From positions 17,360,001-17,424,000 of the forward strand of contig OZ287752.1 in NCBI GenBank assembly GCA_965649765.1: a DNA stretch of 64,000 nucleotides. The letters run 5' to 3'. A program made the position numbers and the translations under genes. This document shows, in pieces, positions 806-50,299 of the stretch. Source of the stretch: Bispira polyomma. Taxonomy: Eukaryota. Position 1 is the first letter of the stretch; each line of letters begins with the position of its first letter. The notes beneath the pieces are model-generated. The model made no database searches, had not been told where the DNA came from, and saw only the letters and a list, made by a program, of their open reading frames with translations.

Positions 806-1114
806 TTTCTCCAGTAGATGTGAGTTCATCAATACAGAAGATCACATATACAGAAATAAATAAAAAGGCTTTGCTAAACTGTACAGTGAGGGCTTATCCA
901 GCAGTCACGTCTGATTATGTGGATGTCAGGTTTAAAGGTTCTAAAATACCTGCTAACAGTATACAGGTGGAAGCGGTGGAGGATAATTTGGATGAGACTC
1001 TGATAGAACTGACCTTTGACCCTGTAACAGTTGAGGACTTTGGTCTGTATCAAGTTGTACTGAATAATGGCGTAGGAGATGAAGTGGTGATTGAACTGAA
1101 CTTGAGTGAACCAG
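806..1114 (+). CDS. Gene A exon: membrane-proximal Ig-like domain
   Basis: tttag| acceptor; LLNCTVRAYP...EDFGLYQVVLNNGVG; paralog of 24112-24420. Confidence 0.85.
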
Positions 1115-4100
1115 GCTAGTAATTATTTGTGATTCATTTTAAGATAGAGAAAATGTTATATATTACTTTAACAAATATAACTTCATAATGCTTTATATTG
1201 TTTTAAACAATACTTTTAAGAAGACTTGGGTATCTAGTTATCCTTGCATCGCCTTAGTTATGACCGTTTACAGTGCATGTGTTATTTGATTTATGTAGTA
1301 TACTTTCATATTAGTAAATACAGTACATTAATTAAGCACCTGAATATTTTACCCCCCCCCCCCCCCCAAAAAAAAAAAAAAAAAAAAACAAAAAAAAAAA
1401 AAAAAAAAAAAAAAAAACAAACATACTTTCTGTTTTAGTCAAAATAACTTTGAAGAGCATCTTTTAATATCCATTGTCTTTTAATATGAACTTTAAACAT
1501 TATTTCGTGGATCAGGATAATGTTTTATTCACTTTGTAGCCATGACATTGAAATTAAGGATATTTCCACATCTAGATCTCAGTAAACACTTGCTCAAAGT
1601 TTTCACTTTCACTTCAGATATTCATGAAGGGTCATGAATTTAAATGTTGATAGGGTTATATTTTGCTTATGTTTTCTCTAACAGGGCATAGCTTTCACAC
1701 TTTTACTAACACTCATAAATAGTTACGAACTTTCCACTTTTGATTAACTAATACAATGTACATGTTAATGACTTTCAGGTGTACCTGAAGCACCACATTC
1801 TTTAATATTTGGGTCAGTAACTGCCATATCAGTGACCCTCTCTTGGATTCCTGGTCGGAGCCGTGGTGCAGATCAAACATTTACAGTGTATTACAGGCAT
1901 CATGGAGACACTAAAATACTGTATTATGATGAAACACAAACCAATGCAAATGGCAAAAGAACTATGTACAAAGTGTCTAGTTTATTACCTGATACAGAGT
2001 ATTTCTTTAGGGTTAAATCACAAAACCTATATGGGAAAAGTCATCACTCACCAGAGATATCAGTTACAAGTCTAGGTACCAGCATTTTTTTAATTGTACC
2101 AACGTTATTATTGTAATATCTGTGTATATCAGCGCATTAAACACTCAGGCTTCCAGGGTTTCCCCTTTAACTCAACTATTAGTGTACTGGACTATTAATC
2201 TTGAACATCCAAAGAGCCCCGTTTCGAATACCAGCCACAGTTAGTTATTTCTGTTGTTTATATGGTGGAAATCAGTGGAAAAGATCCCTCCCTCTCATAA
2301 GCCAAGCAAGTTAGTTAAATTATTGAAGAATTTTTGTAAGACCTGAGGACAGGTCTTTGTGAAGGAGTGGCATGTAATATCCGTGTATATCAGCGCATTA
2401 CACACTCAGCCTACCAGGGTTTCCCCTTTAGCTCAACTGTCAGTGTACTGGACTATTAATTTTGAACATCCAAAGAGCCCTGACTCGAATCCCAGCCATG
2501 GCTAGTAATTTATGTCGTTTACATTATTCAAAATGTGTGCTTTTATGTTTAGGATGTATAATTTAGACATCAAGACCCTAAAGGAGTCTGATACTTCAGT
2601 TGACCCCACACACTATATTACAAACTACCTTAACTAAACCCCTGGCGAATGGATCGACTTATTTTGCTCTGTCCATCCAACCATACACGCAGCCAGTTCT
2701 TTGTCTTAAGCAACAATACATTTTCCCTCCAAAAGCTCTCCATTAAGCTTCTTGATACTGAAGCATACACATGTTAATTTGGAAATTTGAGAAAAGGAAT
2801 TAAGAAACTTATTCATCTTATGTTTCTTATTTTTATTTACAATTATTTTATGTTTTAGTGTGAATTATTTTATGTGGCGAGGAACAATTGGAATGTGCAT
2901 TTATGGATTTTACTTTGTTGATTTTAGTGTGTGTTATGGACGATAGCAGTGTTTAGTAATTAGTTGAGTGTATGCACGACATTAGTGCTTTTAGTGATTT
3001 AGTGAATCTGCACCTGGCAACGAAATGGGGAAACCAAAAAAGACACCTTCAGAGGAAGCTCGAGTAAAGACCAGGACATTTAAGAAAAGTACTGGACGTG
3101 TAAAATCTTCAAAGAAAAAGATCACGGAGGGGCAGGTAAACGACAGTTTATTAACAAATTTACGACTACCTCTGTACCCAGAGAATGCCGCGCAGTTTGC
3201 ATCCCCTCAGTTAGGCCAACAGATACCGACGACTACTGCGAGTCACACGCATCCCCTACAAAAGTCAGGGCGCTTTAACAGCACTGATATACCCACATCC
3301 GACCCTAAGCTTAGATGGGCCAACGAAGACTGGGTGGGCGGCACGGGACGAAAGCGTCCAACGTTCGACGAACTATCGTTACCACAGTGGGCAGCGGGCC
3401 AGCTGGCTAACGCCTTACAAGTGTCTGATCCGTCGACATCACGAGAAATGGTGCAACAGGTCATCCTGTCTTTAAGAGACCCTGCATATTTCCCATAGGA
3501 GGTGGTAAGAACTGCATGGCTACACAACATGCACGAGGTAGAAGAGGGCAGACTCCAATGGGCTGACAAAACGCAGTGGCCGCTTAACCGATTAAACGCC
3601 TCTCAGATGGCAATGGCCAACCTGGGTCATTCGAGTAACGTCCATGGCTCACATAATTCACAGTCAACAAGAACTATTTGCAAGCTCTTCAACACGGGAA
3701 AGTGTACTAACAAGTCAGACCATGGCCAGTACCGCCACATCTGCTGGCACTGTGCTACCGTCCTACACAAGGACTCCTTACATCCGGAATTTAAGTGTTA
3801 CAGGGCGAATTCGTCTAAACAGCAGGAGAATAAAAGCAACAATAGTTAGGACAGTAACCAACGACTAGCTGAACGCACATTGGGGAAGTACTGTAGGTAA
3901 CTGAGCGTGATTAATCACAATATAGCTACGAGTCATAATTATTTCATCCCTACTTATAGTTATGTCAATACTAGTACTGATAAAGAATTTCAAGTGCTCT
4001 GCCAGAGTGAAGGCAGCACGTGCAATATTAATGATAATAAAGGGGTCAATTTTAGATCCCAACAAAATGACTTAAATTTGTTATATACTGAAGCTATCAT

Positions 4101-7100
4101 GGACACCAGTATAGGGTCCTCATATAATGATGTATATACGTGTAATGATAATGGACTAATGCAGTATGCTCCAGGGGAGACGTACACAGACATTAGGTCA
4201 CACTTATGTGAGGTAATTGTTCAAATTACCAATTGGTCACATTGCTTCTTTAACAACATTGAAACTTTACCTATCATTTATCTAAGGGCTGTCAAAGGTA
4301 ACTTTGCAGGTTTCTAACTTGCAGGGAGATCTTAGCCCCCATGAGGTTTTTGAAAATTATCAGAAAGACATGGCCTCAGTTAGGAGCCATGGATGTACTT
4401 ATACAGAATTTATAACTAATATTATTGACATGATCATAGACAATGATGACAATGATCAGTCAGGGTTGGCTGCTCAACCTGTGACTGTAGCTGAGCCAGT
4501 AAGCATGCAACAGGATAATGTCTTGTCGTCGTTCACCGACTTCTTCGGGAAAACCTCAGATTTTCAGTCAGAAGTTCTTAAGGGCCATAAGGACATTACA
4601 GACATAAACTTACCTGATAAGAATAGGGGTTTTCTCATGCTATCCAACTCAAATTTTATTTTTACAGGCCCGGATAGGGCTTCCATGTTGATCTCTTCTG
4701 TTGAACAAATGGCTTACATAGCCAGTATTATTAGGGACACAGATTGCCCCAACTATAAAGGAGCAAGAATTCCTTTAATTTCAGGCCTTAAGATTGAACA
4801 ATGGGAAATAATCTTAGCAGATCACCCAGATAAGTTACTTATACAATACTTAAAATTCGGCTTCCCTCTTTCCTTGAATGACCCGACTTCTCTCAAGGTT
4901 AAGGAGGCTAACAATCATTACTCAGCTCTACAGTTTAAGGCTGAAGTTAGTCACTATCTACAGAAAGAAAAAGTCAATGGCACCATGTTGGGGCCAGTAG
5001 AGAATATACATAGCGACTTGTACCACTGTTCGCCCCTCCTCACTTGTCCTAAAGACTTAAATAAACGTAGAGTTATATTGAACCTATCACACCCACAGGG
5101 TCAATCACTTAATGATAATGTTGATAAACTTCTATTTGACGGTATCCAATTTGCTTTAAAATTCCCTACCATAGACGATATAGTACAACAAATACGTATT
5201 ACCAGAAATCCGAGAATCTTTAAGTTGGATGTTTCTAGGGCGTTTAGAAATTTGCGCGTTGATCCGGTGGACGCTATGAAACTAGGGATATGTTTTGAAG
5301 GCGGTAAATACGTGGATCCAGCGGTCGCGTTCGGCTGGGTACACGGATCCGTGGCCTTTCGGCGTTGCTCAGACATAATTGCCTATGCCATGGAAAAAAT
5401 TGGTCATAAGGTATTTTGTTATATCGATGATTACGTAGGCATATTGGAGGAAAATACAGCAGACAAAGCTTTTCAAGATCTTCATGATTTAGTCGTGTCA
5501 CTGGGACTTCCCGTTAATGCTGACAAATTATCAGCTCCTGACACAAAAATTACTTGTCTAGGTATCGACATTGACTTAATTGCAGGTACAATTAGTATAA
5601 CCAAAGAAAAGATCGAGGAGACTCACCAGTTATGTACTGACATTTTTAAAAATCACTGGATATCTCGCAGCAAATTCCAATCATTGTTAGGTAAACTACT
5701 ATATATACACAAATGTGTTAAACCTGCTAGGGTTTTCATTAATAGACTTCTTATGGCATTCCGTGGTAAACCTCAGGCAAAACGATTCAAAGTTACTCGA
5801 GCTATGAAGGCAGACATTGCCTGGTTTATTACTTTTCTTAAGCGCTATAACGGAATAACTTACATAAATTCGAAAATTGATGTTGATATTAACACCGTAT
5901 ATATAGATGCCTGCTTAACAGGTATAGGGGGAATTTACAACCAACAGGTCTACGCTTCTCCAATATACAATGTATACAATAGGCCTCTCACCATTGTACA
6001 CATTGAAATGTTAAACATATTGATAGCTCTCAAAGTCTGGGGTGAACAGTGGAGACACAGCACTATTAACATACTTTGTGACAACATGGCAGTGGTACTA
6101 GTCGTTGGTACTAATAAGACTAAGGATGAGTTCTTAGCCCTACGTCTTAGGAATATATGGTTACTTACAGCAGAATTTGACATCACATTACAAATAGATC
6201 ACGTTAAGGGCAAGAATAATTGCATAGCAGATGCACTCTCTAGAATTTATTCTGAACACTTTTCAGTTAAGGAACAGAATGTCTTATCAAGAGAAGATTT
6301 TGTGTGGCAACAAATCCCACTTAATTTCTTTAATTTTGACATTTCTGTTTAATTTCAGGCTCCACTCAGGTTACACAGGAGCTTGTGGGCTCAGCATGGG
6401 AAAGAATTAACACAGCACTACGACCAAAGACCACAATTCTCCTTTTAAACCCTTACCAAAAGGAATCTTTGAAATTCAACACTTACTACTTATATCTAAA
6501 GCATGCAATTCCTTACAGGATCCAATACTGTACAGAGCCATCTTTCTGCTATCATTCTTTGGTTTCCTTAGAATTTCTAACATTGCTCCCCACTCCAGGG
6601 CACAATTTGATCACACCCGACACCTATTAAGGAAAGATATCATTTTTGGCCCTCCAGGAGCTCATGTCATCATCAAATGGTCCAAAAACTTACAAGCTAG
6701 GGGTGAGGTTCATATCATTCAACTTCCTCTACTAGAAAATAAAGAATTGTGTCCAGTGAGAGCTCTGGAAAACTTACTAACTTCAAGGGTTCTTCCAGAC
6801 ACTCATCCTTTATTTGAGTCTGGCACACTGCCACATGAACCCATAGTAGACACACACATTCGCTCTGCTCTAGCCTCTGTACTAGCATACGCTGGCATTC
6901 CACAAAAATCACACACTTTTCATACTTTCAGGCGCTCTGGAGCAACATTTGCTTTTAACAATAATGTCTCATTACAAAATATAATGTCCCATGGACTGTG
7001 GAGGTCGTCTGCTGTCTGGACTTACCTCCAGAAGACTTCAAAGGCAGCTTCCACAGTCCCCCTCACTTTTGCTTCCTCTATCCCTAAATTCCTTTAGTTT

Positions 7101-9415
7101 GGCTTGGGTATTTTAAAAATTATTTTATAACTTTTTAAAAGTATGTTTTAACCCACTATGATTTTGTAAATAGACTCTAACATGTATAGGAAATAAACTC
7201 TCTCAAACATTTAACTTATTACATCACTTCCAACCACATATAGTACCTCACTTCATATCCTGACCTTGACTTACCTTTACTTGGGCAAACTGTAGACATC
7301 AAGACCCTAAAGGGGTCTGATACTTCAGTTGACCCCACACACTATATTACAAACTACCTTAACTAAACCCCTGGCGAATAGATCGACTTATTTTGCTCTG
7401 TCCATCCAACCATACACACAGCCAGTTCTTTGTCTTAAGCAACAATACATTTTCCCTCCAAAAGCTCTCCATTAAGCTTCTTGATACTGAAGCATACACA
7501 CGTTAATATGCCCACCTCCTCCCCTTACCACAGCTAAATTAAGTTATTTGCCTTAGAGGCCGAGTGGGGGCTTGTTACAGTCTTCTTCAACCCACCCCTG
7601 AGCATCACGCCTAAGGAGCTAGGATTGAAAATGGGCTCTGAGAGGCTGGATCTACCCTTGCCAGGCGATGGATGCCATTGGCCTCCTGGGCCATGTTATA
7701 CAAATTGCAACCTTCTCATTCGCCCCTCGGGGTTGAGCAATCAATTTTGGCTAGTCTGTGATTTAGCATATAATTGCTGTTAAATTGACTATCAGTGACA
7801 CATATGGGTCCACTGCATTGATATAATTGATGATATACTGTATTAAGATACAGTGGTGGTTTACTGAATATTTGTTAAAAAGGTGTCTGCCTAGTTACGT
7901 TATTGTTGTATAGATAGATACTGTGATAATATTGTAACGGTAGGGGTATTTTAAAAATTATTTTATAACTTTTTAAAAGTATGTTTTAACCCACTATGAT
8001 TTTGTAAATAGACTCTAACATGTATAGGAAATAAACTCTCTCAAACATTTAACTTATTACATCACTTCCAACCACATATAGTACCTCACTTCATATCCTG
8101 ACCTTGACTTACCTTTACTTGGGCAAACTGAGAATGTGTTCTTCATAACCAGTCAATACGCTATATATTTAATGGTATAGATGTGCACCAATTGTTACTA
8201 AAGCAGGTTGAGTTGTTATATATAGGTAAATAAACCAGTATAAATGTATAAATTTGCCCTGTGGGTAACACACTCACATGCAGATAAATGCACTGAGTGT
8301 ACATTTGAATGTAATGATTTACAATTACTCATACCTCTATAGTTATGGTGTATATATTTTTTAAGGTCTACCATCGGTGAGAGGGATATTAGAAGCAAAA
8401 ATATATGAAGATATTGTGGTTTTGTATTGGGAACACATAGATGGAAACTACACAAGAGCTGATTTGCTGAAATGTTACAATGGACAGCAAAATTGCATTT
8501 CAATATACAATATTATTGATACAAGTGTTACAAGATACGCAGTGGATACTGTATATGATGGAGAGGAGTACTATCTTGTGATATATCAGGATACTGATGA
8601 AGTAACAGCTGAACAATTTACTATGACTCACAAAAGTAAGTTTGCCTATGAAAAGAAAAACAGGTCTGCCATATAGGATATAAAAACGTGTTCAATACGA
8701 AAGTACACAATTAATATTAAAATATTTAAAAAATAATTATATATTTGACACTTAACATATTAGAATTAATTGGATTTTAAGGTTTCTTTTTCAGCCCCTT
8801 GTGGAGATATTGTTCACGAGAAAGACACTGGACTAATAGCAGGCATAGCCATTACGTCTGCCATGGTTGGTTTACTTACAGCTTCACAAGTTATACTGAT
8901 TGTATTGTTTAGAAGGAGACAGAACCTAAATGGCGACAATACTAAATGGCCTTCAGTAAGTGAAAATAAGCATGAAATGATATTTAGCAGACTTGTGTCA
9001 CTGACAATGGAATATGTTCAATATGCAATGTGTGTTCTCTCTTTCACCAAGTTTTTTTTCAGTTGCATGCATGTTTGGTAAAATGTTTTTATTTAATTGT
9101 GACATGTACATATTTTTAGAATGAAGGTCCAACAACATATGAAAATGTATCACCTACACATGAAATCGGCAACTATGAGATGACAAAACCAGAAGAACCA
9201 ACACCACCTGCTATGTATACCGATTTGAAGGTATGGTCCCTGCATAATTGATACAACTGAATTAATCACAGCAAATATTATAACTGACTTAGCAAGGATT
9301 TTTTGCATTATTTCTAACTTAACTATTTATATCTATTCTCTTTTTGTTCAGATATTTGCTCTAAATAAGTACTATATTATTATTCCAGCAAGTGACATAT
9401 GAAACCATTAACTGA
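806..9415 (+). CDS. Gene A (5' part lies outside the window): IgSF/FN3 type I membrane receptor with ITSM/ITIM tail; exons 806-1114, 1779-2075, 8366-8635, 8795-8955, 9120-9230, 9389-9415
   Basis: Six exons with the same lengths (309/297/270/161/111/27 nt) and phases as the last six exons of gene B, and clear protein similarity. The first donor is GC (ccag|gctagt). Confidence 0.85.
1352..1420. repeat. poly-C/poly-A low-complexity tract
   Basis: Direct inspection. Confidence 0.9.
1779..2075 (+). CDS. Gene A exon: fibronectin type III domain
   Basis: VPEAPHSL...SVTLSWIPG...SLLPDTEYFFRVKSQN FN3 signature; tttcag| and |gtacc sites. Confidence 0.9.
2113..2524 (+). repeat. Two ~150-bp direct repeats (2113-2263, 2374-2524) with a degenerate tRNA-like core (SINE head or tRNA pseudogene)
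   Basis: A-box-like tagctcaactg and B-box-like ctcgaatccc/ttcgaatacc in both copies. Confidence 0.6.
3025..3849 (+). pseudogene. DIRS gag-like ORF with in-frame stop (TGG>TAG at 3496-3498)
   Basis: KSGRF...LRWANEDW...FDELSLPQW and a C-terminal Cys/His finger CKLFNTGKC...HICWHC; the homolog at 44786-46021 has W at the stop position. Confidence 0.85.
4304..6352 (+). CDS. DIRS reverse transcriptase / RNase H
   Basis: Uninterrupted 682-aa ORF; KLDVSRAFR, FGW, YIDD; RNase H motifs DAC..E..DN..ADALSR. Confidence 0.95.
   Translation: MQVSNLQGDLSPHEVFENYQKDMASVRSHGCTYTEFITNIIDMIIDNDDNDQSGLAAQPVTVAEPVSMQQDNVLSSFTDFFGKTSDFQSEVLKGHKDITDINLPDKNRGFLMLSNSNFIFTGPDRASMLISSVEQMAYIASIIRDTDCPNYKGARIPLISGLKIEQWEIILADHPDKLLIQYLKFGFPLSLNDPTSLKVKEANNHYSALQFKAEVSHYLQKEKVNGTMLGPVENIHSDLYHCSPLLTCPKDLNKRRVILNLSHPQGQSLNDNVDKLLFDGIQFALKFPTIDDIVQQIRITRNPRIFKLDVSRAFRNLRVDPVDAMKLGICFEGGKYVDPAVAFGWVHGSVAFRRCSDIIAYAMEKIGHKVFCYIDDYVGILEENTADKAFQDLHDLVVSLGLPVNADKLSAPDTKITCLGIDIDLIAGTISITKEKIEETHQLCTDIFKNHWISRSKFQSLLGKLLYIHKCVKPARVFINRLLMAFRGKPQAKRFKVTRAMKADIAWFITFLKRYNGITYINSKIDVDINTVYIDACLTGIGGIYNQQVYASPIYNVYNRPLTIVHIEMLNILIALKVWGEQWRHSTINILCDNMAVVLVVGTNKTKDEFLALRLRNIWLLTAEFDITLQIDHVKGKNNCIADALSRIYSEHFSVKEQNVLSREDFVWQQIPLNFFNFDISV
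6359..7097 (+). pseudogene. DIRS tyrosine recombinase with an internal deletion and frameshift near 6435
   Basis: FFGFLRISN, HTFRR and HGLWRSSAVWTY catalytic motifs; the N-terminal segment present in the 41269-41664 copy is missing. Confidence 0.9.
8366..8635 (+). CDS. Gene A exon: second FN3-like or juxtamembrane beta domain
   Basis: IVVLYW...YDGEEYYLVIY; paralog of 25838-26107; canonical splice sites. Confidence 0.85.
8795..8955 (+). CDS. Gene A exon: transmembrane helix
   Basis: GLIAGIAITSAMVGLLTASQVILIVLF followed by RRR. Confidence 0.9.
9120..9230 (+). CDS. Gene A cytoplasmic exon with three tyrosine motifs
   Basis: NEGPTTYENVSPTHEIGNYEMTKPEEPTPPAMYTDLK; tttttag| and |gtatgg; conserved in gene B. 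Confidence 0.85.
9389..9415 (+). CDS. Gene A terminal coding exon (QVTYETIN*, ITIM)
   Basis: ttccag| acceptor; 27 nt identical to gene B 26778-26804. Confidence 0.75.
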   Translation, partial: QVTYETIN

Positions 9416-14689: not shown

Positions 14690-16520
14690 ATACTGTCTTT
14701 TCATTTGAGTTCAGTGACAGAGTAGCCATATTTACACTTCTACACAAGTTAGAGGTACTTCCTGTTTCCATAAGTTTCGCACATAGGTTTATACAGGATT
14801 TTTGATATATTGAATCTAAATATATTCATTCATTTAAAAAATGATATTTGATAGGAATGGCTTTATATAGCCCGTCCACTTGGTAGTTGAGATAAATGAT
14901 TGGTAAAGTTATCTACTGTGAAGTAAGCGTGATAAGCTATTGGGCTAAATTTATTTTATGGAAGTCAGTAATGAGATTTCTGTTTGAGTATTTATTTTAT
15001 ATACATGTTAGTATATGTATACAGGTTAACAATTTGTAAAATAAATGTTTAAAATTTTTTAAATATTAAGCCCCAATAGGGAACTAACACCAACTGACAT
15101 AATCCGCAAACAACATAGGACCAGCCAATTAATAGTTTAGGACTAGCCTGTACATAATAATACATACAAAACCATAATATTTAAAAAGTGTGTTTTACTC
15201 TCATGTTATTTAAACCTCGATAAGTGGATACAATTAAAACTCTAAAATACACGAACGAATAATTATGTCATAAATGGTCTTTTTATTACCACACAAAATA
15301 CATACATTTCCACCATAAACCATGTTTTTCAAGTATACTAACATAATTAGTGCAAAGTGCAAATCATAGCTTGCACCCATTTTATTCTTTACTTGCTTAA
15401 ATTTTTGCTCTGAAACTTTCAGAACAGTCCAAAGTTAGGGTCCTGTCGGTTATGGTTTTGAACTTGTCTTTGGTTTATTATGTGTTGCACTTCAGAAAAT
15501 GCATACCATCAGTCATGTTAAATATACATTACACAATTAAATGTGAACTTTTCTGTCGCTAGTTCTGATTACTAACAGCACATAACCAGAATGTACACTA
15601 CAATAATAATAATACAAAAATGGAATGTAATAACAACAACCTAGTGAATGTCTATAAAATCTAAACAAGAACATTAAAGTCTTTTAACAGTAAATTCAGT
15701 ATACAAGTACATTATAAGGCAAGTTATAATATCTGGTGACAGTGGGAAGAGAAATAAAAGAGGAAAGAAGAAAATGCCGGAAACGTTGCAGACATGATTA
15801 TAAGAAGATGTAGTGGTGAATCCAATTGTTTTACATTCCACAATGGCCCTTTTCATTAAAACGTGTAGGTTTAGCATCATTAAGAAATAACAACCATCTT
15901 AATGAAAATGTCCAATAGAGCCCTCACAAAACAGAGGCCCACTATCTTTATTGATATATTTATGTTTGTTTTAAACGTTGTGAATCTTTGTCCTGAAATG
16001 CTCTCCTGTGTGTACAATGTATTTTTATACACACAATGACAAATGCTTTCCAATGTATCTATTTAAGTTTTATTCTAAGTTGCATTCATTCAAGAATAAT
16101 TTTAACACTTGATAACTCACGAAAACACACATAATTAAATATCAGTATGGCTAAGACTTTGTGAGTGACAAGTAAACATGTACACTTTTGTAAACAGTCT
16201 GTCCAGATTATTATCTAGCTATTGATATTATATATTATGCAGGCCAACAAAGGACAAGGAAGTTATTTACACATGACGTATTTCAGCGAATAGCTAAACT
16301 AAGTACTGATAGTACTGGTGAAAAATTTTATAATATCTTAAATGTTCAAATTTGTTTAATGTGGACATGTTTGTAATCATGGGATTCTACGTAAATATCT
16401 GTCTATCTATTGTTCGGATTGTCACCTTATTTTGTATGTGTTTTATGCATATCTTTGGATATTGAGATTATCTAAAAATAATTGTCAGTGTACTATAGAA
16501 AATTATCACAATATATTATA
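14690..16520 (+). repeat. Upstream region of gene B, segmentally duplicated at ~39635-40817
   Basis: Many colinear shared blocks, e.g. gtacttcctgttt, aaaatgcataccatca, agagccctcacaaaaca, gaatagctaaactaagtactga. Confidence 0.9.
14905..15320. repeat. Interspersed repeat with an inverted copy at ~29815-30240
   Basis: Reverse-complement matches such as aaacctcgataagtggataca/tgtatccacttatcgaggttt and actagcctgtacataat/attatgtacaggctagt; absent from the 39.6-kb paralog. Confidence 0.8.
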
Positions 16521-17221: not shown

Positions 17222-17602
17222 CTGTATTTGATGTGGGTAATACAGAAGTGACCCAAGTGTCCTACACCACATCCTACCCAGCTGACAGTGGTTACTACAT
17301 ACTGGATGGAGAACAGCTGACACTGGACTGTGTGTTTACAGGAACACTGACCTCACTGGTGTGGTGGACACTAAAGGGAAGTAATGAGCAAATCATACTA
17401 GTTTCTCCTAACAGAGAGGATAACATACCTGACAGTGAGTACAAATCCAGGATAGAAGACTCTACACTGACATCAACTTCTCATCAGTTGGTGATTAGAG
17501 TCAACAAACAACAGGATGAGGAGCAGGAGTTCAGGTGTCGTGTTGTCAAGGAGGATAATATATTTGGATCTGAGAAAGACAGACAACTTGGAGACATTTT
17601 AG
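17222..17602 (+). CDS. Gene B exon: N-terminal V-like Ig domain
   Basis: GEQLTLDC..LVWW..SRI..HQLVI..DEEQEFRC. Confidence 0.9.
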
Positions 17603-23600: not shown

Positions 23601-26600
23601 GTGAAGCTACAGGAGGTAACCCACCTGAGGTGTTGTCTTATAGCTGGAGTTTTGTACCTCGGTATGAAGAGAGCAGTGATCCGAGTAGTGACACAGACAT
23701 AGAGTTACAGTTTGACAGTGTAGAGTACAGACAGGCTGGGGTGTACAGATGTGAGGTAACTAATGAGGGAGGTGTGAACAATGACAGCGTAGAACTGTTT
23801 GTGCAATGTGAGTAATATAATCATGTAAATATAGTACAATATGACATTGGAGAGTACACACAGGTTTAAATATATATTGGATGTTTTGTATAATATTCAT
23901 TAAATTACAACAATAATGCACATAAGCAAAAAATACAAATTATTGCCAATGTAACAGTTGCGACAATGGTTATATCGCAAAGGCATTAACTTCTTTATGT
24001 TTATAACATACAATATATGATAGAACTCGTGTGCCATATTAGTAATATTTCTGTAGTGTGTCTTCTACTTGAGAAACTTTATGTATTGTTTGTTAAAATT
24101 GTTCCTGTCAGTTTCCCCAGTAGATGTGAGTTCTTCCTTACAGAAGACTGCATATGCAGAAGTAAACATAAAGACTTTACTAAGCTGTACAGTGAGGGCT
24201 TATCCAGCAGTCACTGCTGATCATGTGGATATCATATTTGAAGGTTCTAAAATACCTGCTAATACTATACATGTGGAAGCAGTGGAGGATAAAGTGGATG
24301 AGACTCTTATAGAACTGACATTTGACCCTGTAACATCTGAGGACTTTGGTCTGTATCACGTTGTACTGAATAATGGTGTAGGGGACGAAATTATGGTTGA
24401 ACTAAGCTTGAGCGAACGAGGTGAGTAATCATTTTAAAGTTACAGAAAAAGTTTTTGATTAGGATCAATTATTAGTATAAATGATACATTTTATGTACAT
24501 ATTTGAGAAAGATACTACATATTAGAACACTACTGCTATCGATGATGGAAAAAAATTTCAACAACACTTATAAAAAGGCTTTGTTGTCTAGTAATTTAGT
24601 ATATATTCAGTTATTATACTTTACAGTGTAATTAAACAATTAACCATTGTTAATATATCAAATGTTCTTTGCTTTGTGAGGCTTTATTAGTTGGAGTTAT
24701 AACCTAAAAACTAAGAATATTGCACAAACTAAATCTGGGTAAACACTAGTTAGAGGAGGTCACTTTCAGTTAAGATGTCCATAATGACAAGTACAGAAAC
24801 ATTGTAGGGTATTATTTATTCGATACTTTACTTTGGAGATTAGCACCGACTTGGCATACAATATCTGGGTTATATCTCAAGTAGCATGAGATGTTTGTTG
24901 TAACAATTATCTCTAAAATGGTATAGCTCAAAATAAGGCAGAGCATTAATATTATCAATAATATTAGTTAGTTACTTCACATTTATTGATTAACTATTCA
25001 ATTACATATACATGTTTTTAGGTGTACCAGAAGCACCACATTCTTTGGTATTTGAGTCAGTAACTGCCATATCAGTAACCCTCTCTTGGATTTCTGGTCA
25101 GAGTCGTGGTGTAGAACAAACCTTTACAGTGTATTACAGACATCAAGGGGACACCAAAATACTATATCATGATGAAATCCGGACCATTGAAAATAAGAAA
25201 ATAAATGTATACAAAGTCTCAAGTTTATTACCTAATACTGAGTATTTCTTTAGAGTTAAAGCACAAAACCAATATGGAGAAAGTGAGCATCAACCTGAGA
25301 TATCAGTTACAACTTTAGGTACCTGCATTTGTTAAATTATACCACCATTATTACTTAATAAATACATATATTTGTCCAATGAGCTTTACAATTCATATGT
25401 ATTCTCCATGTTGTTTTTGTACAGTAATAATATACAATATTATGGTATATATGTACATGACATAGGCAGCAATTCGAACTTCTAAATACAAAAGTTTATA
25501 ATTATATATGCGGCATTGTGGGTAACACTTGTCCCTAGTAATGCACAGGTCCTAGTTTCAGTCCCAACTGCGTTCTTTAATGTATAGATAGGTACCACAT
25601 AAAATTGCGGTTCTCTGCCGTTTACTTCTGTCCTTAGTGGCAGATAAAAAACCTTGGGGATGTTGATGTTTTCATTCTCAAGTTTCTGTCTTCAGTTAGT
25701 AAAATGATGGTTGGCTGTAGTTGAGTAGATAATGACAGATAAATGAATTAACTATACATAGAAATCAAATACAAATTATCCCTCAAATATATCATTTACC
25801 ATATTTTTAGAGTTATATTTTCTAATATTTATGCTAGGATTACCATCAATGAAAGGGATATTGGAGGCACACCTATATAAAGAAATTGTGGTCTTGTACT
25901 GGGGACACATAGATGGGAATTACACAAGAGCTGCTTTATTGAAGTGTAACAATGGACGACAAAATTGCTTTTTAGTTTACAACATTACTGATGTCATTGT
26001 TACAATTTTTACAGTCTACACTGTATATGATGGAGAAGAGTACTATCTTGTAATATATCAGGATAATGATGAAGTAATAGCCCAAAAGTTTACCATGACA
26101 GACAAAGGTAAATTTAACTGTAAAAAACATGTTTGTCATACAGAAATATGGATACCATAACTTCTTCACTATAAACTGCATAATTTGTATAAATGTTCGA
26201 AGTTTAATTTTTCTCTTTGTAGCACCTTCTGCAGATATCATTAAAGAAAAAGACACTGGACTGATAGCGGCACTTGTAGTTACATCTACAATGGTTGGTG
26301 TACTTGCAGTTGCCCTAATTATACAGATTATTTGCCACAAAATGAGACTGAGGCATAATGATGACAATAACAATGGGTTTTCTGTAAGTAATAACAAGCA
26401 CAACACTATAATTAACAGACTCATATCATTCACAATCAGTAAGTGTTAATTGGTTACAGTTACTTCTGGTAACATGTTTATATTTTGTTGTGATATATTT
26501 TACAGAATCAAGGTCCAACAACATATGAAAATGTACCATCTACACATAAAATCAGCAACTATGAAATGACAAAACCAGAAGAACAAACACCAACGGCTGA

Positions 26601-26804
26601 ATATACAGATTTGAAGGTATGACCATCACATAATTGATACAAGAAAAATAATAACACCCAAATAGTATAACTGACAGAGAACAGATTTTTTTGAGTTGTT
26701 TAAACTTAATTATTTAAATGTTATTTTTTTTTCAGATATAAAATGTGTACTAAATGTGTACAATATTATTATTTCAGCAAGTGACATATGAAACCATTAA
26801 CTGA
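17222..26804 (+). CDS. Gene B: nephrin-like architecture IgSF receptor (7 Ig + FN3 + FN3-like + TM + ITSM/ITIM tail), ~1017 aa plus an unresolved leader; exons 17222-17602, 18938-19264, 19450-19746, 20198-20479, 20915-21226, 23529-23807, 24112-24420, 25022-25318, 25838-26107, 26223-26383, 26506-26616, 26778-26804
   Basis: All exons are open with canonical AG/GT; ectodomain exons are phase 1-1 with lengths divisible by 3; Ig C..W..C signatures. Confidence 0.9.
17955..18209 (+). pseudogene. 5'-truncated duplicate of the V exon (orphan half-V segment)
   Basis: Near-identical SRIEDSTLTSTS.QLVI.VNKQQDEEQEFRCRVV; lacks the first Cys strand; donor tttag|gtcagt retained. Confidence 0.85.
18938..19264 (+). 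CDS. Gene B Ig domain 2 exon
   Basis: IEGVQQTIEC...HQGQQVQC; canonical sites. Confidence 0.9.
19450..19746 (+). CDS. Gene B Ig domain 3 exon
   Basis: EDTPLTFTC..SIPLP..DNKAEFYC. Confidence 0.9.
20198..20479 (+). CDS. Gene B Ig domain 4 exon
   Basis: IECISTSANPEP..INGVIYKC. Confidence 0.9.
20915..21226 (+). CDS. Gene B Ig domain 5 exon (C2/CD80-like)
   Basis: VMCRTDEGNPTPTVRWY..LNGREYSC. Confidence 0.9.
23529..23807 (+). CDS. Gene B Ig domain 6 exon (I-set-like)
   Basis: EGSSLSLTCEATGGNP..YSW..QAGVYRCEVTN. Confidence 0.9.
24112..24420 (+). CDS. Gene B Ig domain 7 exon
   Basis: LLSCTVRAYP..EDFGLYHVVL; gtcag| and |gtgagt. Confidence 0.9.
25022..25318 (+). CDS. Gene B FN3 exon
   Basis: SVTLSW..LLPNTEYFFRVKAQN. 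Confidence 0.9.
25838..26107 (+). CDS. Gene B FN3-like or juxtamembrane domain exon
   Basis: Paralog of 8366-8635, same length. Confidence 0.85.
26223..26383 (+). CDS. Gene B transmembrane exon
   Basis: GLIAALVVTSTMVGVLAVALIIQIIC-HKMR. Confidence 0.9.
26506..26616 (+). CDS. Gene B cytoplasmic exon
   Basis: NQGPTTYENVPSTHKISNYEMTKPEEQTPTAEYTDLK. Confidence 0.85.
26778..26804 (+). CDS. Gene B terminal coding exon (QVTYETIN*)
   Basis: tttcag| acceptor; in frame with the preceding phase-0 donor. Confidence 0.75.
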   Translation, partial: QVTYETIN

Positions 26805-31402: not shown

Positions 31403-31457
31403 ATGGAAAGGATACTTGTTATAACAATAATGATGTGTGTTTTATGCCTGTGTGTGG
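31403..31457 (+). CDS. Gene C signal-peptide exon
   Basis: Hydrophobic 18-aa leader, phase-1 donor g|gtaagt. Confidence 0.85.
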
Positions 31458-31812
31458 GTAAGTACTCTTTTTATACTATGAATATTCTGTTAAGGCTAAA
31501 TATTGTTAGTGGAGAGGCTAAATGGTTAATGGTACATAACTTAATCAATGGTACTGTATTTTATGATTTCTATGTTAACATTTTGCTTCTTAACATAAAA
31601 TATGTAACTGCATTCACTTAATAAGCAACAAGAGTATAATATTCAATATACTGAATAAACCCGATATTTTTGGTCTTACTTATGTTTCTTGAAAAACTTT
31701 GCATTTAAAATTTTTGCAGAAAGAGACACACCTGCAACATCTATTGACCTAAATAATGATATCATACATAAACATTAGTTATAGAAATAAAGTAATCTGC
31801 ATTTTGTTTCAG

Positions 31813-32142
31813 CTACCACGTGTCCTAATTCAGGCAATGCATATGACAAAGAAGAGTTTGCAGAGGCTGGAGGTTCAGTAAGTTTACAGTGTGGCTCACT
31901 CGGTGAGGATACTATTGTAATCTGGTACTACAAAGGAATATCAGTCATTGTTGGCCACAACCTTGAGAGTGACACTGGACCTGTGTATCCTGATGAAGAC
32001 AACTACCCCAGGTCAAAGTACAGCTATAGTGAAGTGGATTACTCACTGACTATACACAATGTGGGATTGGAGGACCTGGATTGTTTTAAGTGTACAACAA
32101 ATCCATCTAACAGGCAAATTACCACTCTGGTTACACTTATAG
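31813..32142 (+). CDS. Gene C V-set Ig exon (open)
   Basis: GGSVSLQC..IVIWYY..YSLTIHNVGLEDLDCFKC. Confidence 0.85.
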
Positions 32143-32844
32143 GTATGTATGCAGCACCAAACTATGTAATGATTACAAAATTCAATAGATTTATTTATTA
32201 TGTGTGTTCTACAGAAATTAGGAGAGTAAAACATCTAGAAAATGTGTTTTGTCCACGTCTATGCTGTTGCTTTAGAGGTTATATTGCCTGTCGGGCAATA
32301 AGAAAATTAGTAATCATTCATATTTTACTATGGCTGGTAATTATGTGCTTTAAGGATACTGCTGTCCAACCAGGTTTCTCGTATATGAATATTATGAATC
32401 CAGTAGGAGTGCATAGTCGATATTTGGCCATGAATGGTTTTCAAGTTTGAGCCAAATAATATAATATCCATCCAAGACTTCAGATTAATTGTTCAGATGT
32501 GAATTGACACGAGTTGAGATCACAAAAACAAACTTTTTAACACATACAAGTGTAGGCATAAACAAAGAAAGCTTCCCTTAAATGCATCCACACCATTATC
32601 TGTATCAGGCTTGTAGGTAACTAATAGGTCAAAGTATTTTGCTAAAAATGTAAAATACAGTATAACAGATTGAGGGATTCATGGAAACAAAAATGTTAAA
32701 CTCCTCATGTGCAAAAGAATTTACCCTTTTGGGATCAAATTTATTAATTTAGTTGAACCAAAGTTGTTAAACAAGTAACATTAAAAAATCCCCACCACCT
32801 GGTGTGTAATGCACACAAATACAGCGTTCAAATAGATTGGTTCG

Positions 32845-32990
32845 CGTTTAACAGCTTAGGTTATATCATGAGGGCCAGATTCATTGGTGGAAGAAATCAG
32901 TGTTGGAGCACTGAAAACCACTAGTTTATGACAAATCCCTACCAGTGATAGTTAGGCAGGCAATTCTAACCACTAGGCCTCCACAACCCC
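32845..32990 (-). mobile_element. Degenerate tRNA-derived SINE
   Basis: Reverse complement of ggcctagtggttag head and a catgatataacc..gttaaac tail. Confidence 0.5.
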
Positions 32991-35900
32991 TATGTCTTGG
33001 ATATTTTGTACATGTTATTGCGTTGTTATACCTTTATTACAGCCAAAGCGGCTTGGTATGATGAATCCTCACATGTCTGGCACTATGACCTAGTGTGTAA
33101 TGCACTCATTGGATGTGTATAACTATTCAAACTTATACCATGCATTGTTAGGTCAATCCATCAAAGTTAATTGATTTTGCAATTTTTCTGTAAACCAAAG
33201 AAATATTCACTTAAATGTCTTAATTTTTTTTTCTTATTGTTGGTCATTTATTTTATGTTTAATGACACCACAGATACCAAGCTTCACAGTATTACCCACT
33301 TTTCAAGAGAACACAGATATTTCCGTCCAGTGTAAAGTGTCAACAGTAAAACCAGGGAAGGGAAGTATCCAGTTTACTGTCAGAGTAGTTCCAGACTTTA
33401 GTGTTGAGAGTTCAGACAGTGAGTTGTCAGAAGAAGAGGTAGACTCTAATACAGGAGCTGTGTCAGTGAGTTACACTACAGAGATCAGACTACAGAGAAA
33501 ACACAATGGGCAGGATACAGTGTGTGAACTAGAGTGGAGAGGAGAAACCTTTACTTCTAATACACAACAGGCTAATGTTGAATGTAAGTGGTAAATTAGT
33601 TATATTATGTAGCTAGGTTTTTAAATTAGTAAATATTACTAGTTAATTAAGGAGTGACCTTTGTTCAACAGTAATAGATGGTACTCTGACTTTATGATAC
33701 CATTGTTCTTCAGTGTTTAATTAAATAAATGCTATATCTCTTTCAGTCAAAGCCTATCAATTGGCTATAGATGGTGAACCAACAGACTTAGTAGAAAAGA
33801 ACACAGGTATAACAGTGGTGTGTAGAACAGATGAAGGTAATCCTACACCCACAGTGAGGTGGTACAGAGGTGACCAGACTGTACCTGTAGATACTGACTT
33901 GGAGGTTGTAACTAATATGGAGACTGATGGTTCACTGTACAATGGTAAAGTGAGTGTAAGTACACTTAGTCTACAGGTTGATAGCACTCTAAATGAAAAA
34001 AGTGTATAGATGTAATGTAGAAGATACTAGTTTAAAGGAATAATTTGAACTGGAAGTGGCATGTAAGTTATTATAATTAATTTTAAGTGAATTCAACAGG
34101 TAAATCTAGATGTTTGTGAAAGAAAGATTTGTAACTGTCCCAAATTAATAGTAGGAGAGTGATTAGTTACTATTAAATCACATAAAGATATGAAGCACTA
34201 TATGCTACCGAGGGTATGAAAATGTTAAGACTTGACATTACTGTTTAGGTTCATCAGAGATTGGGGAAGAAGGTCCATTAACATCTTCAATATAGAAATA
34301 TGTTATAACATACATCCTGTTGTTTTATTTTTCATTTTTTTTATCCTTTATGATATCAACAGGATAAGCAAGGTTATCAAAAATAAATAATGTCAGATAG
34401 AACATTTTGTCCTGACTAATAAACAATGCTAAATGAATATATGTTCATTCACTTTGTATTATTTCAAAACTATGTCATCTATATGTTGTTGTTTTTTTTT
34501 GCAGTCGGTTAAGTATTTGAAAAATATAGTATCTGGATGAATTGAAAAAGTGTTTTTACTCAAATAAAATGTGTCAAAACATGATGTAGAAGTTTTTTTA
34601 ACTAACTGAAACTAATTTAATTAAGAAATTTCAATGAAAATAGATATTATTATTATTGCAAAAAATTATCAATGGAAGTTACAATAGTAACCAAGCATAT
34701 TTTTGTTTTCATCTGCCACTTTGGTTTAATGGGTATCACTACACCTCTTCGTCATCAGGTATTTTCACCTACTTTAACTTCAACAACTTCTCTAACACAA
34801 TATGAATGGTATGAGATTGTTATAGATGCAAATAGACTACAATAGACGAATATCATAACATAAAATACACAATGTAGCTACAGAATTATGGAATACTTTT
34901 ATTACCACCATTTACTGACCATCACCTTCTTAGGCATATTAAGGAGGATTGAGAATATATTTATAACTTTTCTCACTATCTCTTTTCAGCGTCACAGTGT
35001 GAATGGTACTTTAATATTGAATATTTAATATTTTTGATTTAAATATTACTGCTCTAGGTAACGGTAAGCTAATACTGTTTTCAGATATTTGTAAGGATGT
35101 TTTAATATACAACATCCTGGATTAACTTCATTCTAACGTTTGATCCTGGAGAAATTACTTTGACCTGAAGTCATTGTCCTCACTGGATCTCAGGAAGTAC
35201 ATGTTACTTTTCAAATTAATACTGTTGGGATATTCTGCCTGATACAATTTTGGCAGATATTTTAAAAATCAAAGAAATACATGCAGAATTCATTGATGTA
35301 ACTACGAATCTACAAGAAGTGTGTCAGCAAAACAAACTATCAGTGTAAATGATTTGCAGTTTGCTCTGATGCAACATATATATTTCTGAGCATAAAATCA
35401 AACTGTTACTATATCTCAGAGGTTGAATATTGTTCAAAAAAGTTCTGATTAAATTATGTTTGTACCAATAGTTAAACAAACACATAAAATGTTCACCAAT
35501 AAACTAAGCTCTGTGTGAAAGAGGTTACTTGGACCTATTCTACTTTACTTTTTTGAAAATATACTTCATTTATCTATTACTTATATTCTTCTAAACAGAA
35601 AGATATATTGCATATTTCATTTTTGTATAATAGGGAAACATAAGTGAGGTGTGCCAGCATTATGTCACAACAGAAAGGCGTTTCTCTTAGGTTTGTTCAC
35701 AATATGACATTCCTCTGTAGATTTGAAATTGTGTGACGTCACGATACAAGAATCGTTGTAGCTCTGTTTTAAACACTGTGGTACATAATATTAAGGTTTG
35801 AAAAAATGCATATAAAATGGTTAAAACCATTTTAAGACTGCCATAGTAAGCATATAGGCTAAACAAAACATTCATCAATGTATTATGAATCTCTGCCGGC

Positions 35901-36399
35901 AGCGAATTTATGTGTTTACATTACTAAAGCCTTAAGTAAAACTTTTTAAAATTTGCAATAATTTGTCATGTTTATGTGTCAAACTAGCTCATATTCATGA
36001 CTTTTTCATTCTCCTTTGTCAGTGTTAAGGTCATGTTATATTAGTCTATTTAAATAATCCTGAACCAACTTTATAATGGCCAATTGTGCATAGTGAGTTA
36101 ACATGTCAAGGGTAATTTCAAAAGTACATCATGTTATAAAGTTGTTTACTATGTCGCAAGTTTCAGCTCGTAGTATCACCATGACCCAGCCTCCCTCTGG
36201 TCCAGTCTCTGAGAACACAGAAGTGACCTACACCTGTGTGACTGATGAGGCTCAACCTACTGCTGATGTGGTGGGGACTGTAGGAGGAAACAGTGATAGT
36301 TCTACTAGTGACACTACAGAGGTGGGGATGTATAACACAGACCAAAGGACAAGTGTGTTAGAGCTGAGGGTGGACACAACAATGAATGACAAGGAACTG

Positions 36400-36670
36400 G
36401 TGTGTTATGTTAGTGGGAAATCGGCAGTGAAAGATACAGTAACACTGGCTGGTACATGTAAGTAATATATTTAAGTTGAGTGTTATGTTAGGGATTTAAC
36501 AGTCACACTGGATCTTAGATGTAAGTAATATATTTAGGTGGTGTTTTATGTTAACTGGACGTTATTTTAGACACTATGATACTAGATAAAAGATGTAAGT
36601 AAAAGATTCAGGTGGAATTTTACATCAGTGAAAGTTTTAAATACTGTATTGTTGAAAGTTACATGTAATA
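36400..36670 (+). repeat. Degenerate tandem copies of the exon 3' end and splice donor
   Basis: gtgttatgttag...acactgg...atgtaagtaatatattt repeated 3-4 times. Confidence 0.7.
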
Positions 36671-37579
36671 GAACAAGCTAAAAAATCATAGCATTTTACT
36701 TTTAGACTTTACAGTTTTTAAATATAGTCCACATTCTTTGATAATCTATTTGGCAGATCAGATGTATGACCTTAGATTAATGTCAACCAGTGGCACTGAG
36801 GGTACATGTCCTGGGCTTTTTGTTCATATTTGGAAAAACATCTTTTGTTTGGTATTATATTAACTTACTGGTGATTCAAGATTTTGTTGAATGAAAATGT
36901 TCTGTATTTACCGAAATGAGCTCAAGTTGATACCCTAAGTTCAAGGTGAATAATGACTAATATACTACGCTGTCAAATAAATTTAATACAGTGTTGAATA
37001 GATGCCCATTGAAGGCAGTATGACAACTTCATGAGAAAGCCTACAGTTTGTGTAACTTCTGCACATTTTCGTTTTAAGATTGATTTTTTCTTACTTTTGA
37101 TTTCATTCATCATTATTACTTTTGTAAGACTATTTGGTGTAGCAAATGATAAAACATCTCTTTGTTTACTTCATTCCCATATCTCATGAAGCTGCATTTT
37201 TCTCATTTAGAATTGTAAACATTTTTCACAGTAGTGCTAATACTTCTGCTTGTATCAAATTGTAGTTCCACATGATGTTGCAGTCATGCAGAGTCCCTCA
37301 GATTCTGTGTCAGGCGGTTCCACTCTGACCTTAACCTGTGAAGCTACAGGAGGTAACCCTGCTAAAGCGTTGTCTTATAGCTGGAGTTTTGTACCTCGAT
37401 ATGAAGGGAGCAGTTAGCTGAGTAGTAACACAGACAGAGAGTTAGAGTTTGACAGTGTAGAGTGAAAACAGGCTGGAGTGTACCGATGTGAGGTGACTAA
37501 TGAAGGAGGTGTGAACAGTGATAGCAGAGAACTACTTGTACAGTGTGAGTAATCTAGTGTATTTAGTTTGGTATTAACA

Positions 37580-37670: not shown

Positions 37671-37974
37671 TAATCTAGTCTTGTGTTTTAAAAGTCATTA
37701 TAGTTCTGATTAACTTGTAGAGTAGATACACTTTGATATAGTGTATAGACGTGATGTTATAAGGAGATAGATTGTGAAAATGGGAGTTACAAAGATCATG
37801 TACACTGTGAAGTTGTATGTTGATGATGTTTTTAATAAAAAGATAGAGTTTGACAATGAGTGTTTCTGATTACATATTATGTATTATTTAAAGCTATTTT
37901 ATGTTTTTCAATTGCAATTTATTTACTACTTCCAGTAGTTATTGTAAATATTTAAAATTGAACAGTATAAAAGT

Positions 37975-39487: not shown

Positions 39488-39634
39488 TAGTGCCATAAAT
39501 ATATATAAAAAGGAATATTTTGTTGTATGATTTAGGAATAAATTTGTACAGATTGTCTGAAATGTTTAAATATTTTAACATTCCCCTTTGGCACACAGAC
39601 ACAATGTATCTCATAAAAAGTTCATTGCAATTAC

Positions 39635-40817
39635 ATCTACTGTCTTTAATATCACTCTTCAAAGCAGTCATAATTACACTTCTGCACACCTTACAGGTAC
39701 TTCCTGTTTTTATAAGTTTCACACACATTTTTATACACGGATTGTTTCTTTACTACTTAGATCCCAGAACAAATGCATGCACCATGTTTTAAATAACCTA
39801 ATTGTGACATAAAACTAACATAACAAGCAAAGCGATACCCTCTGTATGCACTCTACACGTAAACTGTCCGTACATTTATTGGTTAATTTTTTGGATTATT
39901 CCTTGGTTGATAGATTTTTATTTTTGTACTACACAAAATGCATACCATCATTCATGTACTTTAAAAATCTAGTAAACAATACTAGTTGAACTTATTTCAT
40001 TTTTCTTATATTACTAACAGCATATACCTAGACTGTACACTACAATAATAATACAATAATGTAATGTAATAACAACCATCCAGTGAATGTCTATAAAATC
40101 TGCACTAGAACCATATAAGAGAAATAAGGGAGAAAAGAAGGAAATGCCGGAAATTTTGCAGACAAGTAGTGGTGATTAAACGTGTAGGTTAAGCATCATC
40201 AAGAAATTACAACAATCTTTGTGAAAATAGCTAACAGAGCCCTCACAAAACAAAGGTCCCCTATCTTTATAGACAAATTTATGTCTGTTTTGAGTGTTGT
40301 CAATCTTTGTCCTGAATCTTACTCCGGTAGGTATGTTTATATACTACAATGATAAAAGGTATCTTTTTAATTTTTATTCTAACTTACATTCATTCAAGAA
40401 TACTTTTAAAACTTGATAAGTGAAGAAAACACACACATAATTAAATATCTGTACAGCAAAGGCTTTGTGAGTGACAAATAAGCATGTATACTTTGCAAAC
40501 AGTCTGTCCTGAATAATATCTAGCTATTTATACGATATATTACAAAGACCATAACTAGGAAATTATTTACTCATGACCTATTTCAGAGAATAGCTAAACT
40601 AAGTACTGAAAGTACTGGTGAAAAAAATCTTTATTATCTGAAATGAGATTTGTTAAATGTGGACATGTTGGTAATCATGGGATTCTTCTTAAATATCCAT
40701 TATCTATTGTCTAGGTTGTCACCTTATTTGGTATGTTTTTTCATATCATTGGATATTAAAATTGTGTGAATATAATTATCAGTGTTATATAGATAATCAA
40801 CACAATATATTATATTT
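39635..40817 (+). repeat. Duplicate of the gene B upstream region (relic of a fourth receptor copy)
   Basis: Colinear with 14690-16520 except for the ~14.8-15.45 kb insertion. Confidence 0.85.
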
Positions 40818-50290: not shown

Positions 50291-50299
50291 ATTGTTCAT

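What the first reader, a model, noticed from the sequence alone, without database searches (positions are those of the whole stretch)
806..40817. Tandem cluster of invertebrate IgSF receptors with ITSM+ITIM tails: candidate inhibitory immune or allorecognition receptor complex
Seen: at least three co-oriented paralogs plus the upstream relic of a fourth, with multi-Ig + FN3 + TM architecture, short tyrosine-rich tails, one pseudogene and an orphan V segment. Established: clustering, birth-and-death evolution and ITIM/ITSM tails are hallmarks of vertebrate paired or inhibitory receptors (SIRP, Siglec, LILR, PD-1) and of the Hydractinia Alr allorecognition complex (Ig + FN3-like ectodomain with ITIM/ITAM). 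True nephrin/SYG-2 genes are usually low-copy with long tails. Inference: this is a lineage-specific self/non-self or pathogen-sensing receptor family that automatic annotation would probably label 'nephrin-like' or 'hemicentin-like'.
Basis: partly seen in the sequence, partly recalled or inferred. Interest (0 to 1): 0.9.

Follow-up and report, generated by a model that had tools for sequence, protein, structure and literature searches.

The report
Large invertebrate Ig receptor gene family
This window holds one intact and three broken copies from a family of about 70 cell-surface receptor genes in an invertebrate (probably a worm), in which the binding tip changes fast and gets swapped between genes while a short signalling tail stays fixed, as in vertebrate immune receptors, although no expression or ligand data exist yet.

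Summary
Only gene B is intact (1035 aa: signal peptide, V-set, six more Ig, FN3, a second FN3-fold domain that Pfam misses, TM, four-tyrosine tail). Gene A has a truncated V exon, gene C is a pseudogene without a 3' half, and D is a frameshifted relic. The family has about 70 members, 66 of 75 FN3-exon hits within 14 Mb of contig C5. Genes are mosaics of swapped 5' and 3' modules. Variation concentrates on the V domain's front face. In a second species two near-identical copies differ at 14 of 102 V residues against 7 of 668 elsewhere. The tail tyrosines are conserved in both species, but the strict ITSM is not and the terminal ITIM only partly. No activating partner and no RNA data were found. 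Best reading: fast-evolving recognition receptors with phosphatase-recruiting tails, probably immune (0.55); allorecognition is unsupported. Not nephrin orthologues, not an assembly artefact. The scan noted this family before at another place on C5 (s1-627045).

The parts
806..1114 (+). Gene A, last Ig exon (GC donor, shared with two neighbours upstream)
1779..2075 (+). Gene A, FN3 exon
2564..8130 (+). Tyrosine-recombinase retrotransposon with split direct repeats in an intron of gene A (RT/RNase H ORF 4286-6349, recombinase ORF 6411-7094)
8366..8635 (+). Gene A, membrane-proximal FN3-fold exon
8795..9415 (+). Gene A, TM exon 8795-8955, tail exons 9120-9230 and 9389-9415
16379..16433 (+). Gene B, signal-peptide exon
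17222..17602 (+). Gene B, N-terminal V-set Ig exon; variable front face
17955..18209 (+). Half-V duplicate in B's intron: open, phase 1-1, 70% identical, lacks strands A-B and the first cysteine; a high-copy repeat sits just upstream
18938..24420 (+). Gene B, six Ig exons: 18938-19264, 19450-19746, 20198-20479, 20915-21226, 23529-23807, 24112-24420
25022..25318 (+). Gene B, FN3 exon
   Evidence: PF00041, E 1e-12
25838..26107 (+). Gene B, second FN3-fold domain, no Pfam match, invariant W and two C
26223..26383 (+). Gene B, TM exon, no charged residue in the helix
26506..26616 (+). Gene B, tail exon 1 (YENV, YEMT, YTDL)
26778..26804 (+). Gene B, terminal exon (VTYETI, strict ITIM); splice not shown by RNA, supported by conservation in two species
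31403..37544 (+). Gene C, pseudogene: signal peptide 31403-31457, different V type 31813-32142, Ig about 33263-33583 (acceptor lost), 33747-34062 (frameshift and stop), 36167-36457, 37266-37544 (two stops); no FN3, TM or tail
39660..40816 (+). Relic D: copy of B's upstream region with an out-of-phase signal-peptide exon at 40677-40730, cut off by transposons

Best explanation
A large, lineage-restricted family of single-pass IgSF recognition receptors evolving by birth, death and exon shuffling. Shown: architecture, copy number, clustering, mosaic genes, many pseudogenes, change concentrated on the V-domain front face, conserved four-tyrosine tail. Inferred: the V domain binds a variable ligand (a microbial adhesin, or a self marker that microbes exploit) at the tip of a long Ig-FN3 stalk; a Src-type kinase phosphorylates the tail; an SH2 phosphatase (SHP-2 or SHIP type) docks on YENV plus YTDL/YETI and damps activation of immune or epithelial cells. 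Swapping V modules between genes changes specificity without changing the output. It works like CEACAM1/SIRP-type receptors but is not a member of those families.
For: 75 FN3, 67 second-FN3, 58 + 17 V and 45 tail-exon hits, almost all on C5. In 264 kb: 11 loci, 6 broken, 4 open in every exon checked, 1 seen only by its V exon. Mosaics: A and B 72-80% alike in the 3' module but 24% in Ig2; G5 and G6 carry crossed combinations. Among four intact B-type V exons 34 of 54 front-face positions vary against 11 of 72 elsewhere, dN/dS 0.99 against 0.18. Only V sets show a positively selected class (p about 0.014; 10 other exon sets p > 0.8). Second species: 14 aa changes in 102 V residues against 7 in 668 elsewhere between two near-identical copies, Fisher p 6e-10. 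Tail dN/dS about 0.3 and tyrosines kept across species. Oyster receptors of Ig-FN3-TM-ITIM build bind microbes and recruit SHIP (PMC11841013); vertebrate CEACAMs show the same front-face pattern (PMC5112662).
Against: No RNA run, so no expression or tissue. No ligand. The selection signal is weak: four intact B-type V exons alone are not significant (p 0.87), the significant sets include broken copies, 13 tests were run, and recombination can inflate the test; front-face dN/dS near 1 also fits relaxed constraint. In the second species pN is about equal to pS within V and the flanking introns are also about 3% divergent, which fits gene conversion as well as balancing selection. YENV is also a Grb2-type site, so the sign of the signal is not certain. 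No activating partner was found.
Confidence: 0.55

Rival explanations
1. A cell-identity or wiring code: many diverged V domains give cell-specific homophilic or heterophilic adhesion in nerve or epithelium, as Dscam, clustered protocadherins or Side/Beat do, with tyrosines coupling to the cytoskeleton.
For: Stalk domains are of the C2-set/I-set/FN3 kind found in neural adhesion molecules; best solved-structure matches are Robo, neurofascin, Dscam, SYG-2, PTPRs and IgLONs, all generic.
Against: More than half the copies are broken, turnover is species-specific, and near-identical copies differ mostly in V. Wiring codes are usually more stable (own knowledge).
Confidence: 0.2
2. A dedicated allorecognition complex like the Hydractinia ARC: polymorphic V domains bind only matching alleles and decide fusion or rejection.
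For: Same layout in kind (V-set, Ig, FN3-like, tyrosine tail), megabase cluster with pseudogenes (PMC9546547); V-focused difference between probable haplotypes.
Against: No sequence match to Alr seen (one search found only two unnamed ENA assemblies); no ITAM members seen; no fusion or rejection biology known for the unnamed host; only one pair of possible alleles, in another species.
Confidence: 0.1
3. A mostly neutral expansion of a nephrin-like adhesion gene in a repeat-rich region; V variability is relaxed constraint plus gene conversion.
For: Many broken copies, dense transposons and a satellite; intact-only V test not significant.
Against: Purifying selection on FN3, tail and the back face of V (dN/dS 0.18-0.35); both V types and the tail are kept in a second species at about 50-60% identity.
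Confidence: 0.1
4. Gamete or mate recognition receptors.
For: Rapid change of a binding surface is also typical of reproductive proteins (own knowledge).
Against: Dozens of paralogues with a conserved signalling tail are not typical of gamete recognition proteins; no expression data.
Confidence: 0.04
5. Assembly artefact (uncollapsed haplotypes).
For: Two neighbours are 97-98% alike in their 3' exons.
Against: Window paralogues differ at dS 0.2-0.4; those two neighbours differ by 15-26% in 5' exons; read contigs match unique stretches of B without differences; a second species has the same family.
Confidence: 0.01

Closest known systems
Hydractinia Alr family / allorecognition complex (PMC9546547)
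   Same: Megabase cluster of about 40 genes and pseudogenes; one domain per exon; V-set tip, Ig stalk, membrane-proximal FN3-like fold; tyrosine motifs in tails.
   Different: No detectable sequence match; longer stalks with two FN3-fold domains; one conserved tail type here against diverse tails with many ITAMs in Alr; no allorecognition phenotype known.
Oyster CgNCAM1 and CgIgIT/IgIT2 inhibitory receptors (PMC11841013; cited in PMC11999971)
   Same: Protostome Ig + FN3 + TM + ITIM receptors; CgNCAM1 binds microbes and recruits SHIP in haemocytes.
   Different: Described as single genes; here a family of about 70 with exon shuffling and a variable V tip. Orthology not tested.
Vertebrate CEACAM, SIRP, Siglec and LILR clusters (PMC5112662 for CEACAM)
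   Same: N-terminal V domain with a fast-changing front face, recombination between clustered genes, species-specific turnover, small tail exons with inhibitory-type motifs.
   Different: No FN3 in those; motif order is ITIM then ITSM there (own knowledge), reversed here; activating partners known there, none seen here; analogy, not homology.
Botryllus FF/FcoR families (PMC12582321)
   Same: Expanded invertebrate IgSF receptors diversifying by intergenic recombination, with ITIM tails.
   Different: Sushi domains, cognate gene pairs, hemITAM members and proven allorecognition role; none of these seen here.
Nephrin / SYG-2 / sns
   Same: Ig array with C2-set-type domains followed by FN3 and TM; a likely source of 'nephrin-like' labels and possibly a remote ancestor.
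   Different: One or two conserved genes with 8-10 Ig, one FN3 and a long tail (own knowledge); here dozens of genes, 4-7 Ig, two FN3 folds, 61-residue tail; SYG-2 is only one of many generic matches.

Membership tests
Hydractinia Alr family | N-terminal V-set domain | tested here: met
   Model pLDDT 70; top fold matches are nanobodies and CD8
Hydractinia Alr family | Membrane-proximal FN3-like fold | tested here: met
   Seven-strand model pLDDT 89; FN3 domains at Z 9.0-9.7
Hydractinia Alr family | Sequence homology to Alr domains | tested here: not met
   Profile of the FN3-like domain against 1.84 billion proteins: 11 real hits, those traced lie in two unnamed ENA assemblies; no direct alignment with Alr was possible
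Hydractinia Alr family | Extreme allelic polymorphism and allele-specific homophilic binding | tested here: inconclusive
   One pair of probable haplotypes in another species is V-divergent; binding not testable
ITIM/ITSM inhibitory receptors | Strict ITIM [ILVS]xYxx[ILV] | tested here: met
   Terminal exon in 8 of 8 neighbours; 2 of 6 readable genes of the second species; the exon's splice is unconfirmed by RNA
ITIM/ITSM inhibitory receptors | Strict ITSM TxYxx[VI] conserved | tested here: inconclusive
   Met in B and 4 of 7 other neighbours, in none of 7 genes of the second species; YENV is the conserved part
ITIM/ITSM inhibitory receptors | Phosphatase recruitment and inhibition | not testable with these tools
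   Needs biochemistry
Paired receptor families | Activating counterpart (ITAM, or charged TM with short tail) | tested here: not met
   None in 8 genes here and 7-8 of the second species; the last two tyrosines are YxxL-x4-YxxI, too close for an ITAM; about 60 other members could not be read
Nephrin / SYG-2 orthologues | Low copy number, 8-10 Ig, one FN3, long tail | tested here: not met
   About 70 copies, 4-7 Ig, two FN3 folds, 61-aa tail
Nephrin / SYG-2 orthologues | Grouping with nephrin in a full-length tree | not tested
   No reference sequences on hand; exon-wise searches show no special affinity

The most novel reading that the evidence does not exclude
An independently evolved, vertebrate-style polymorphic receptor complex in a protostome worm: about 70 genes over 14 Mb in which V modules are shuffled onto a shared inhibitory stalk, half-V exons act as conversion donors, and some unread members carry activating tails, forming a missing-self or paired system.
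Probability: 0.15. Interest if true: 0.85.

Novelty: new variant of a known kind. Interest (0 to 1): 0.52.

Why it matters
Clustered, polymorphic IgSF receptors with tyrosine tails are known from vertebrates, Hydractinia and Botryllus; for protostomes the literature searched shows only single ITIM receptors in oyster. A 70-gene family with a variable V face and a fixed tail would be another independent arrival at the same design and gives concrete genes with which to test self/non-self recognition in a group where its molecular basis is little known. It stays a candidate until expression and binding are shown.

Tried and rejected
Haplotig artefact: rejected. GC donor in gene A as a lesion: rejected, two neighbours share it. 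Upstream AG before the last exon, which would drop the ITIM: less likely, the downstream exon is conserved with silent changes and recurs in the second species; not shown by RNA. ITAM reading of the last two tyrosines: spacing of 4 is too short. Small partner gene head-to-head with these genes: no further Ig exon on either strand in 264 kb. Naming the host: haemocyanin absent (uninformative control), erythrocruorin linker present but linkers occur in ten phyla (PMC6400237), bantam-like hairpin below the cut-off, transposon homologues unnamed, sample accession not in papers. Atlas searches gave only generic FN3 or weak hits. Read contigs gave paralogue variants, not alleles. First codon-model runs failed technically. 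The joined gene model was translated only in a local script and was not sent to any search tool; all searches were exon by exon.

Full report
Observation. The window is animal DNA, 36% GC, from contig C5 (17.360-17.424 Mb) of a 1.035-Gb assembly. Self-comparison finds paired exons on the + strand. Gene B can be modelled with GT-AG phase-1 introns from 16379 to 26804 into one open frame of 1035 residues: signal peptide, V-type Ig, six further Ig, FN3, a 90-residue domain without Pfam match, TM and a 61-residue tail. The unmatched domain folds as a seven-strand FN3-type sandwich (pLDDT 89; Z 9.0-9.7 to FN3 domains), and the first domain as a V-set. The joined model was built only in a local script; every search was run exon by exon.

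The other copies are broken. Gene A keeps an open 3' half (806-9415) with a tyrosine-recombinase retrotransposon in one intron, but upstream of the window its signal-peptide and V exons are doubled and both V copies are cut short. Gene C has a different V type, a lost acceptor, a frameshift, three stops and no 3' half. D is a copy of B's upstream region with an out-of-phase signal-peptide exon, followed by transposons. The half-V exon at 17955-18209 is open and in phase but lacks the first cysteine; similar partial V copies occur in two other genes nearby, and a high-copy repeat lies directly upstream of it.

Family size. Exon searches of the whole genome give 75 FN3, 67 second-FN3, 58 B-type and 17 C-type V, and 45 tail-exon matches; these are exon matches and lower bounds, not gene counts. 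Of the 75 FN3 matches 69 lie on C5 and 66 between 11.1 and 25.5 Mb, in sub-clusters near 13.0, 17.0-17.55 and 18.3-19.65 Mb. In the 264 kb that I could read there are 11 loci: four open in every exon checked, six broken, one seen only by its V exon. The local cluster switches strand near 17.2 Mb, across a 189-bp satellite. Typical paralogue distances are dS 0.2-0.4, which excludes haplotigs.

Mosaic genes. Identity changes sharply along gene pairs. A and B are 72-80% alike from the sixth Ig to the tail but 24% in the second Ig. One neighbour has B-type V and Ig2 (78-85%) on a 3' module only about 30% like B's; another has a B-like 3' module under an unrelated 5' half, and the two share their middle exons (73-83%). 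At least four V types (19-33% alike) sit on the same tail. Uniform phase-1 introns make such swaps frame-neutral.

Where the change falls. Among four intact B-type V exons, 34 of 54 positions in the C-C'-C'' and F-G region vary, against 11 of 72 elsewhere (p 6e-8); dN/dS is 0.99 against 0.18 (the partition was drawn from the model after I had seen the alignment). My own codon-model test finds a positively selected class only in V sets (C-type, p 0.014; B-type with partial copies, p 0.014), in none of ten other exon sets, and not in the four intact B-type V exons alone (p 0.87). With 13 tests, broken copies and recombination this is suggestive, not proof.

A second species. A profile of the second FN3-fold domain finds only 11 real relatives among 1.84 billion proteins, and those traced lie in two unnamed ENA assemblies, mostly one. 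That assembly has the same exon order, both V types (57% to B's) and the same tail layout. Its genes and the local genes here mostly group by species, so the family is older than the split and turns over within each lineage. Two of its contigs carry one gene at 99.3% identity over 9.5 kb, probably two haplotypes; they differ at 14 of 102 V residues plus one indel and at 7 of 668 residues elsewhere (p 6e-10). The introns beside V are also about 3% apart and pN is close to pS, so an old allele and a conversion from a paralogue both fit.

The tail. B reads TTYENV, SNYEMT, AEYTDL, VTYETI. All four tyrosines are kept in both species, with tail dN/dS about 0.3. The strict ITSM holds in five of eight genes here and none of seven there; YENV is what is conserved. 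The terminal ITIM holds in eight of eight here and in some there. The first and third tyrosines are 26 residues apart, close to the spacing of the tandem SHP-2 sites of PD-1, PECAM-1 and CEACAM1 (own knowledge). The last two are only four residues apart, too close for an ITAM as defined in PMC9546547. No TM helix has a basic residue. An inhibitory output is therefore the likeliest reading, but YENV is also a Grb2-type site and nothing here shows the sign.

Host and expression. The genome has a bantam-like hairpin below the cut-off and erythrocruorin linker genes, and no haemocyanin match: a protostome, probably an annelid, not proven, since linkers occur in ten phyla (PMC6400237). No RNA run holds the sequence. 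The three runs found are DNA-like contigs of one study and confirm the assembly only.

Mechanism and comparison. Shown: a long-stalked receptor with an exchangeable, variable V tip and a fixed tyrosine tail. Inferred: ligand binding leads to tail phosphorylation and recruitment of an SH2 phosphatase, and a changing ligand drives V turnover. This works like CEACAM- or SIRP-type clusters (PMC5112662) and resembles Hydractinia Alr (PMC9546547), Botryllus FF/FcoR (PMC12582321) and oyster Ig-FN3-ITIM receptors (PMC11841013), but it is a member of none on the tests run. It fails nephrin orthology on copy number and architecture, though a remote nephrin-like origin of the stalk is plausible. Paper searches found no description of such a family in annelids, within the limits of that library.

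Verdict. Real, and a new variant of a known kind. The scan had already noted the family 4.25 Mb away (s1-627045); I confirm the size and conserved tail, find the selection signal weaker in my sample than that note states, and add the mosaic structure, the second FN3 fold and the second-species comparison.

Noticed in passing
window 2564-8130: Young tyrosine-recombinase retrotransposon with split direct repeats (218 nt at 98%, 187 nt at 100%) and an open 688-aa RT/RNase H frame; about 390 unnamed relatives in ENA assemblies at up to about 50% identity.
   Followed up: partly
window 40900-53100: Nested, decayed elements of the same type on the - strand and a LINE-like fragment near 52.7 kb, inserted just behind relic D.
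   Followed up: no
L005-L007 (C5 17.209-17.221 Mb): A 189-bp satellite array of about 12 kb lies between the minus-strand and plus-strand halves of the local cluster.
   Followed up: partly
L008:1255-2486: Two open frames that look like a small secreted protein (signal peptide, ILEI/PANDER-like words by eye) inside the cluster; no Pfam match at E 0.01.
   Followed up: partly
L017:9564-9896: One neighbour has a tandemly duplicated tail exon, which would give seven tyrosines instead of four.
   Followed up: partly
window 1115; L001:9858; L003:8242: A GC donor follows the last Ig exon in gene A and two neighbours, where other members have GT.
   Followed up: partly
window 8795-8955 and 26223-26383; L027:11020-11200: A polar residue (Q, or E in one gene of the second species) recurs inside the TM helix; it might drive dimer formation.
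   Followed up: no
C5 20.6-22.4 Mb and 11.9-12.1 Mb: Runs of more than 20 distant V-type exons with few FN3 hits nearby: possibly a related family of shorter receptors.
   Followed up: no
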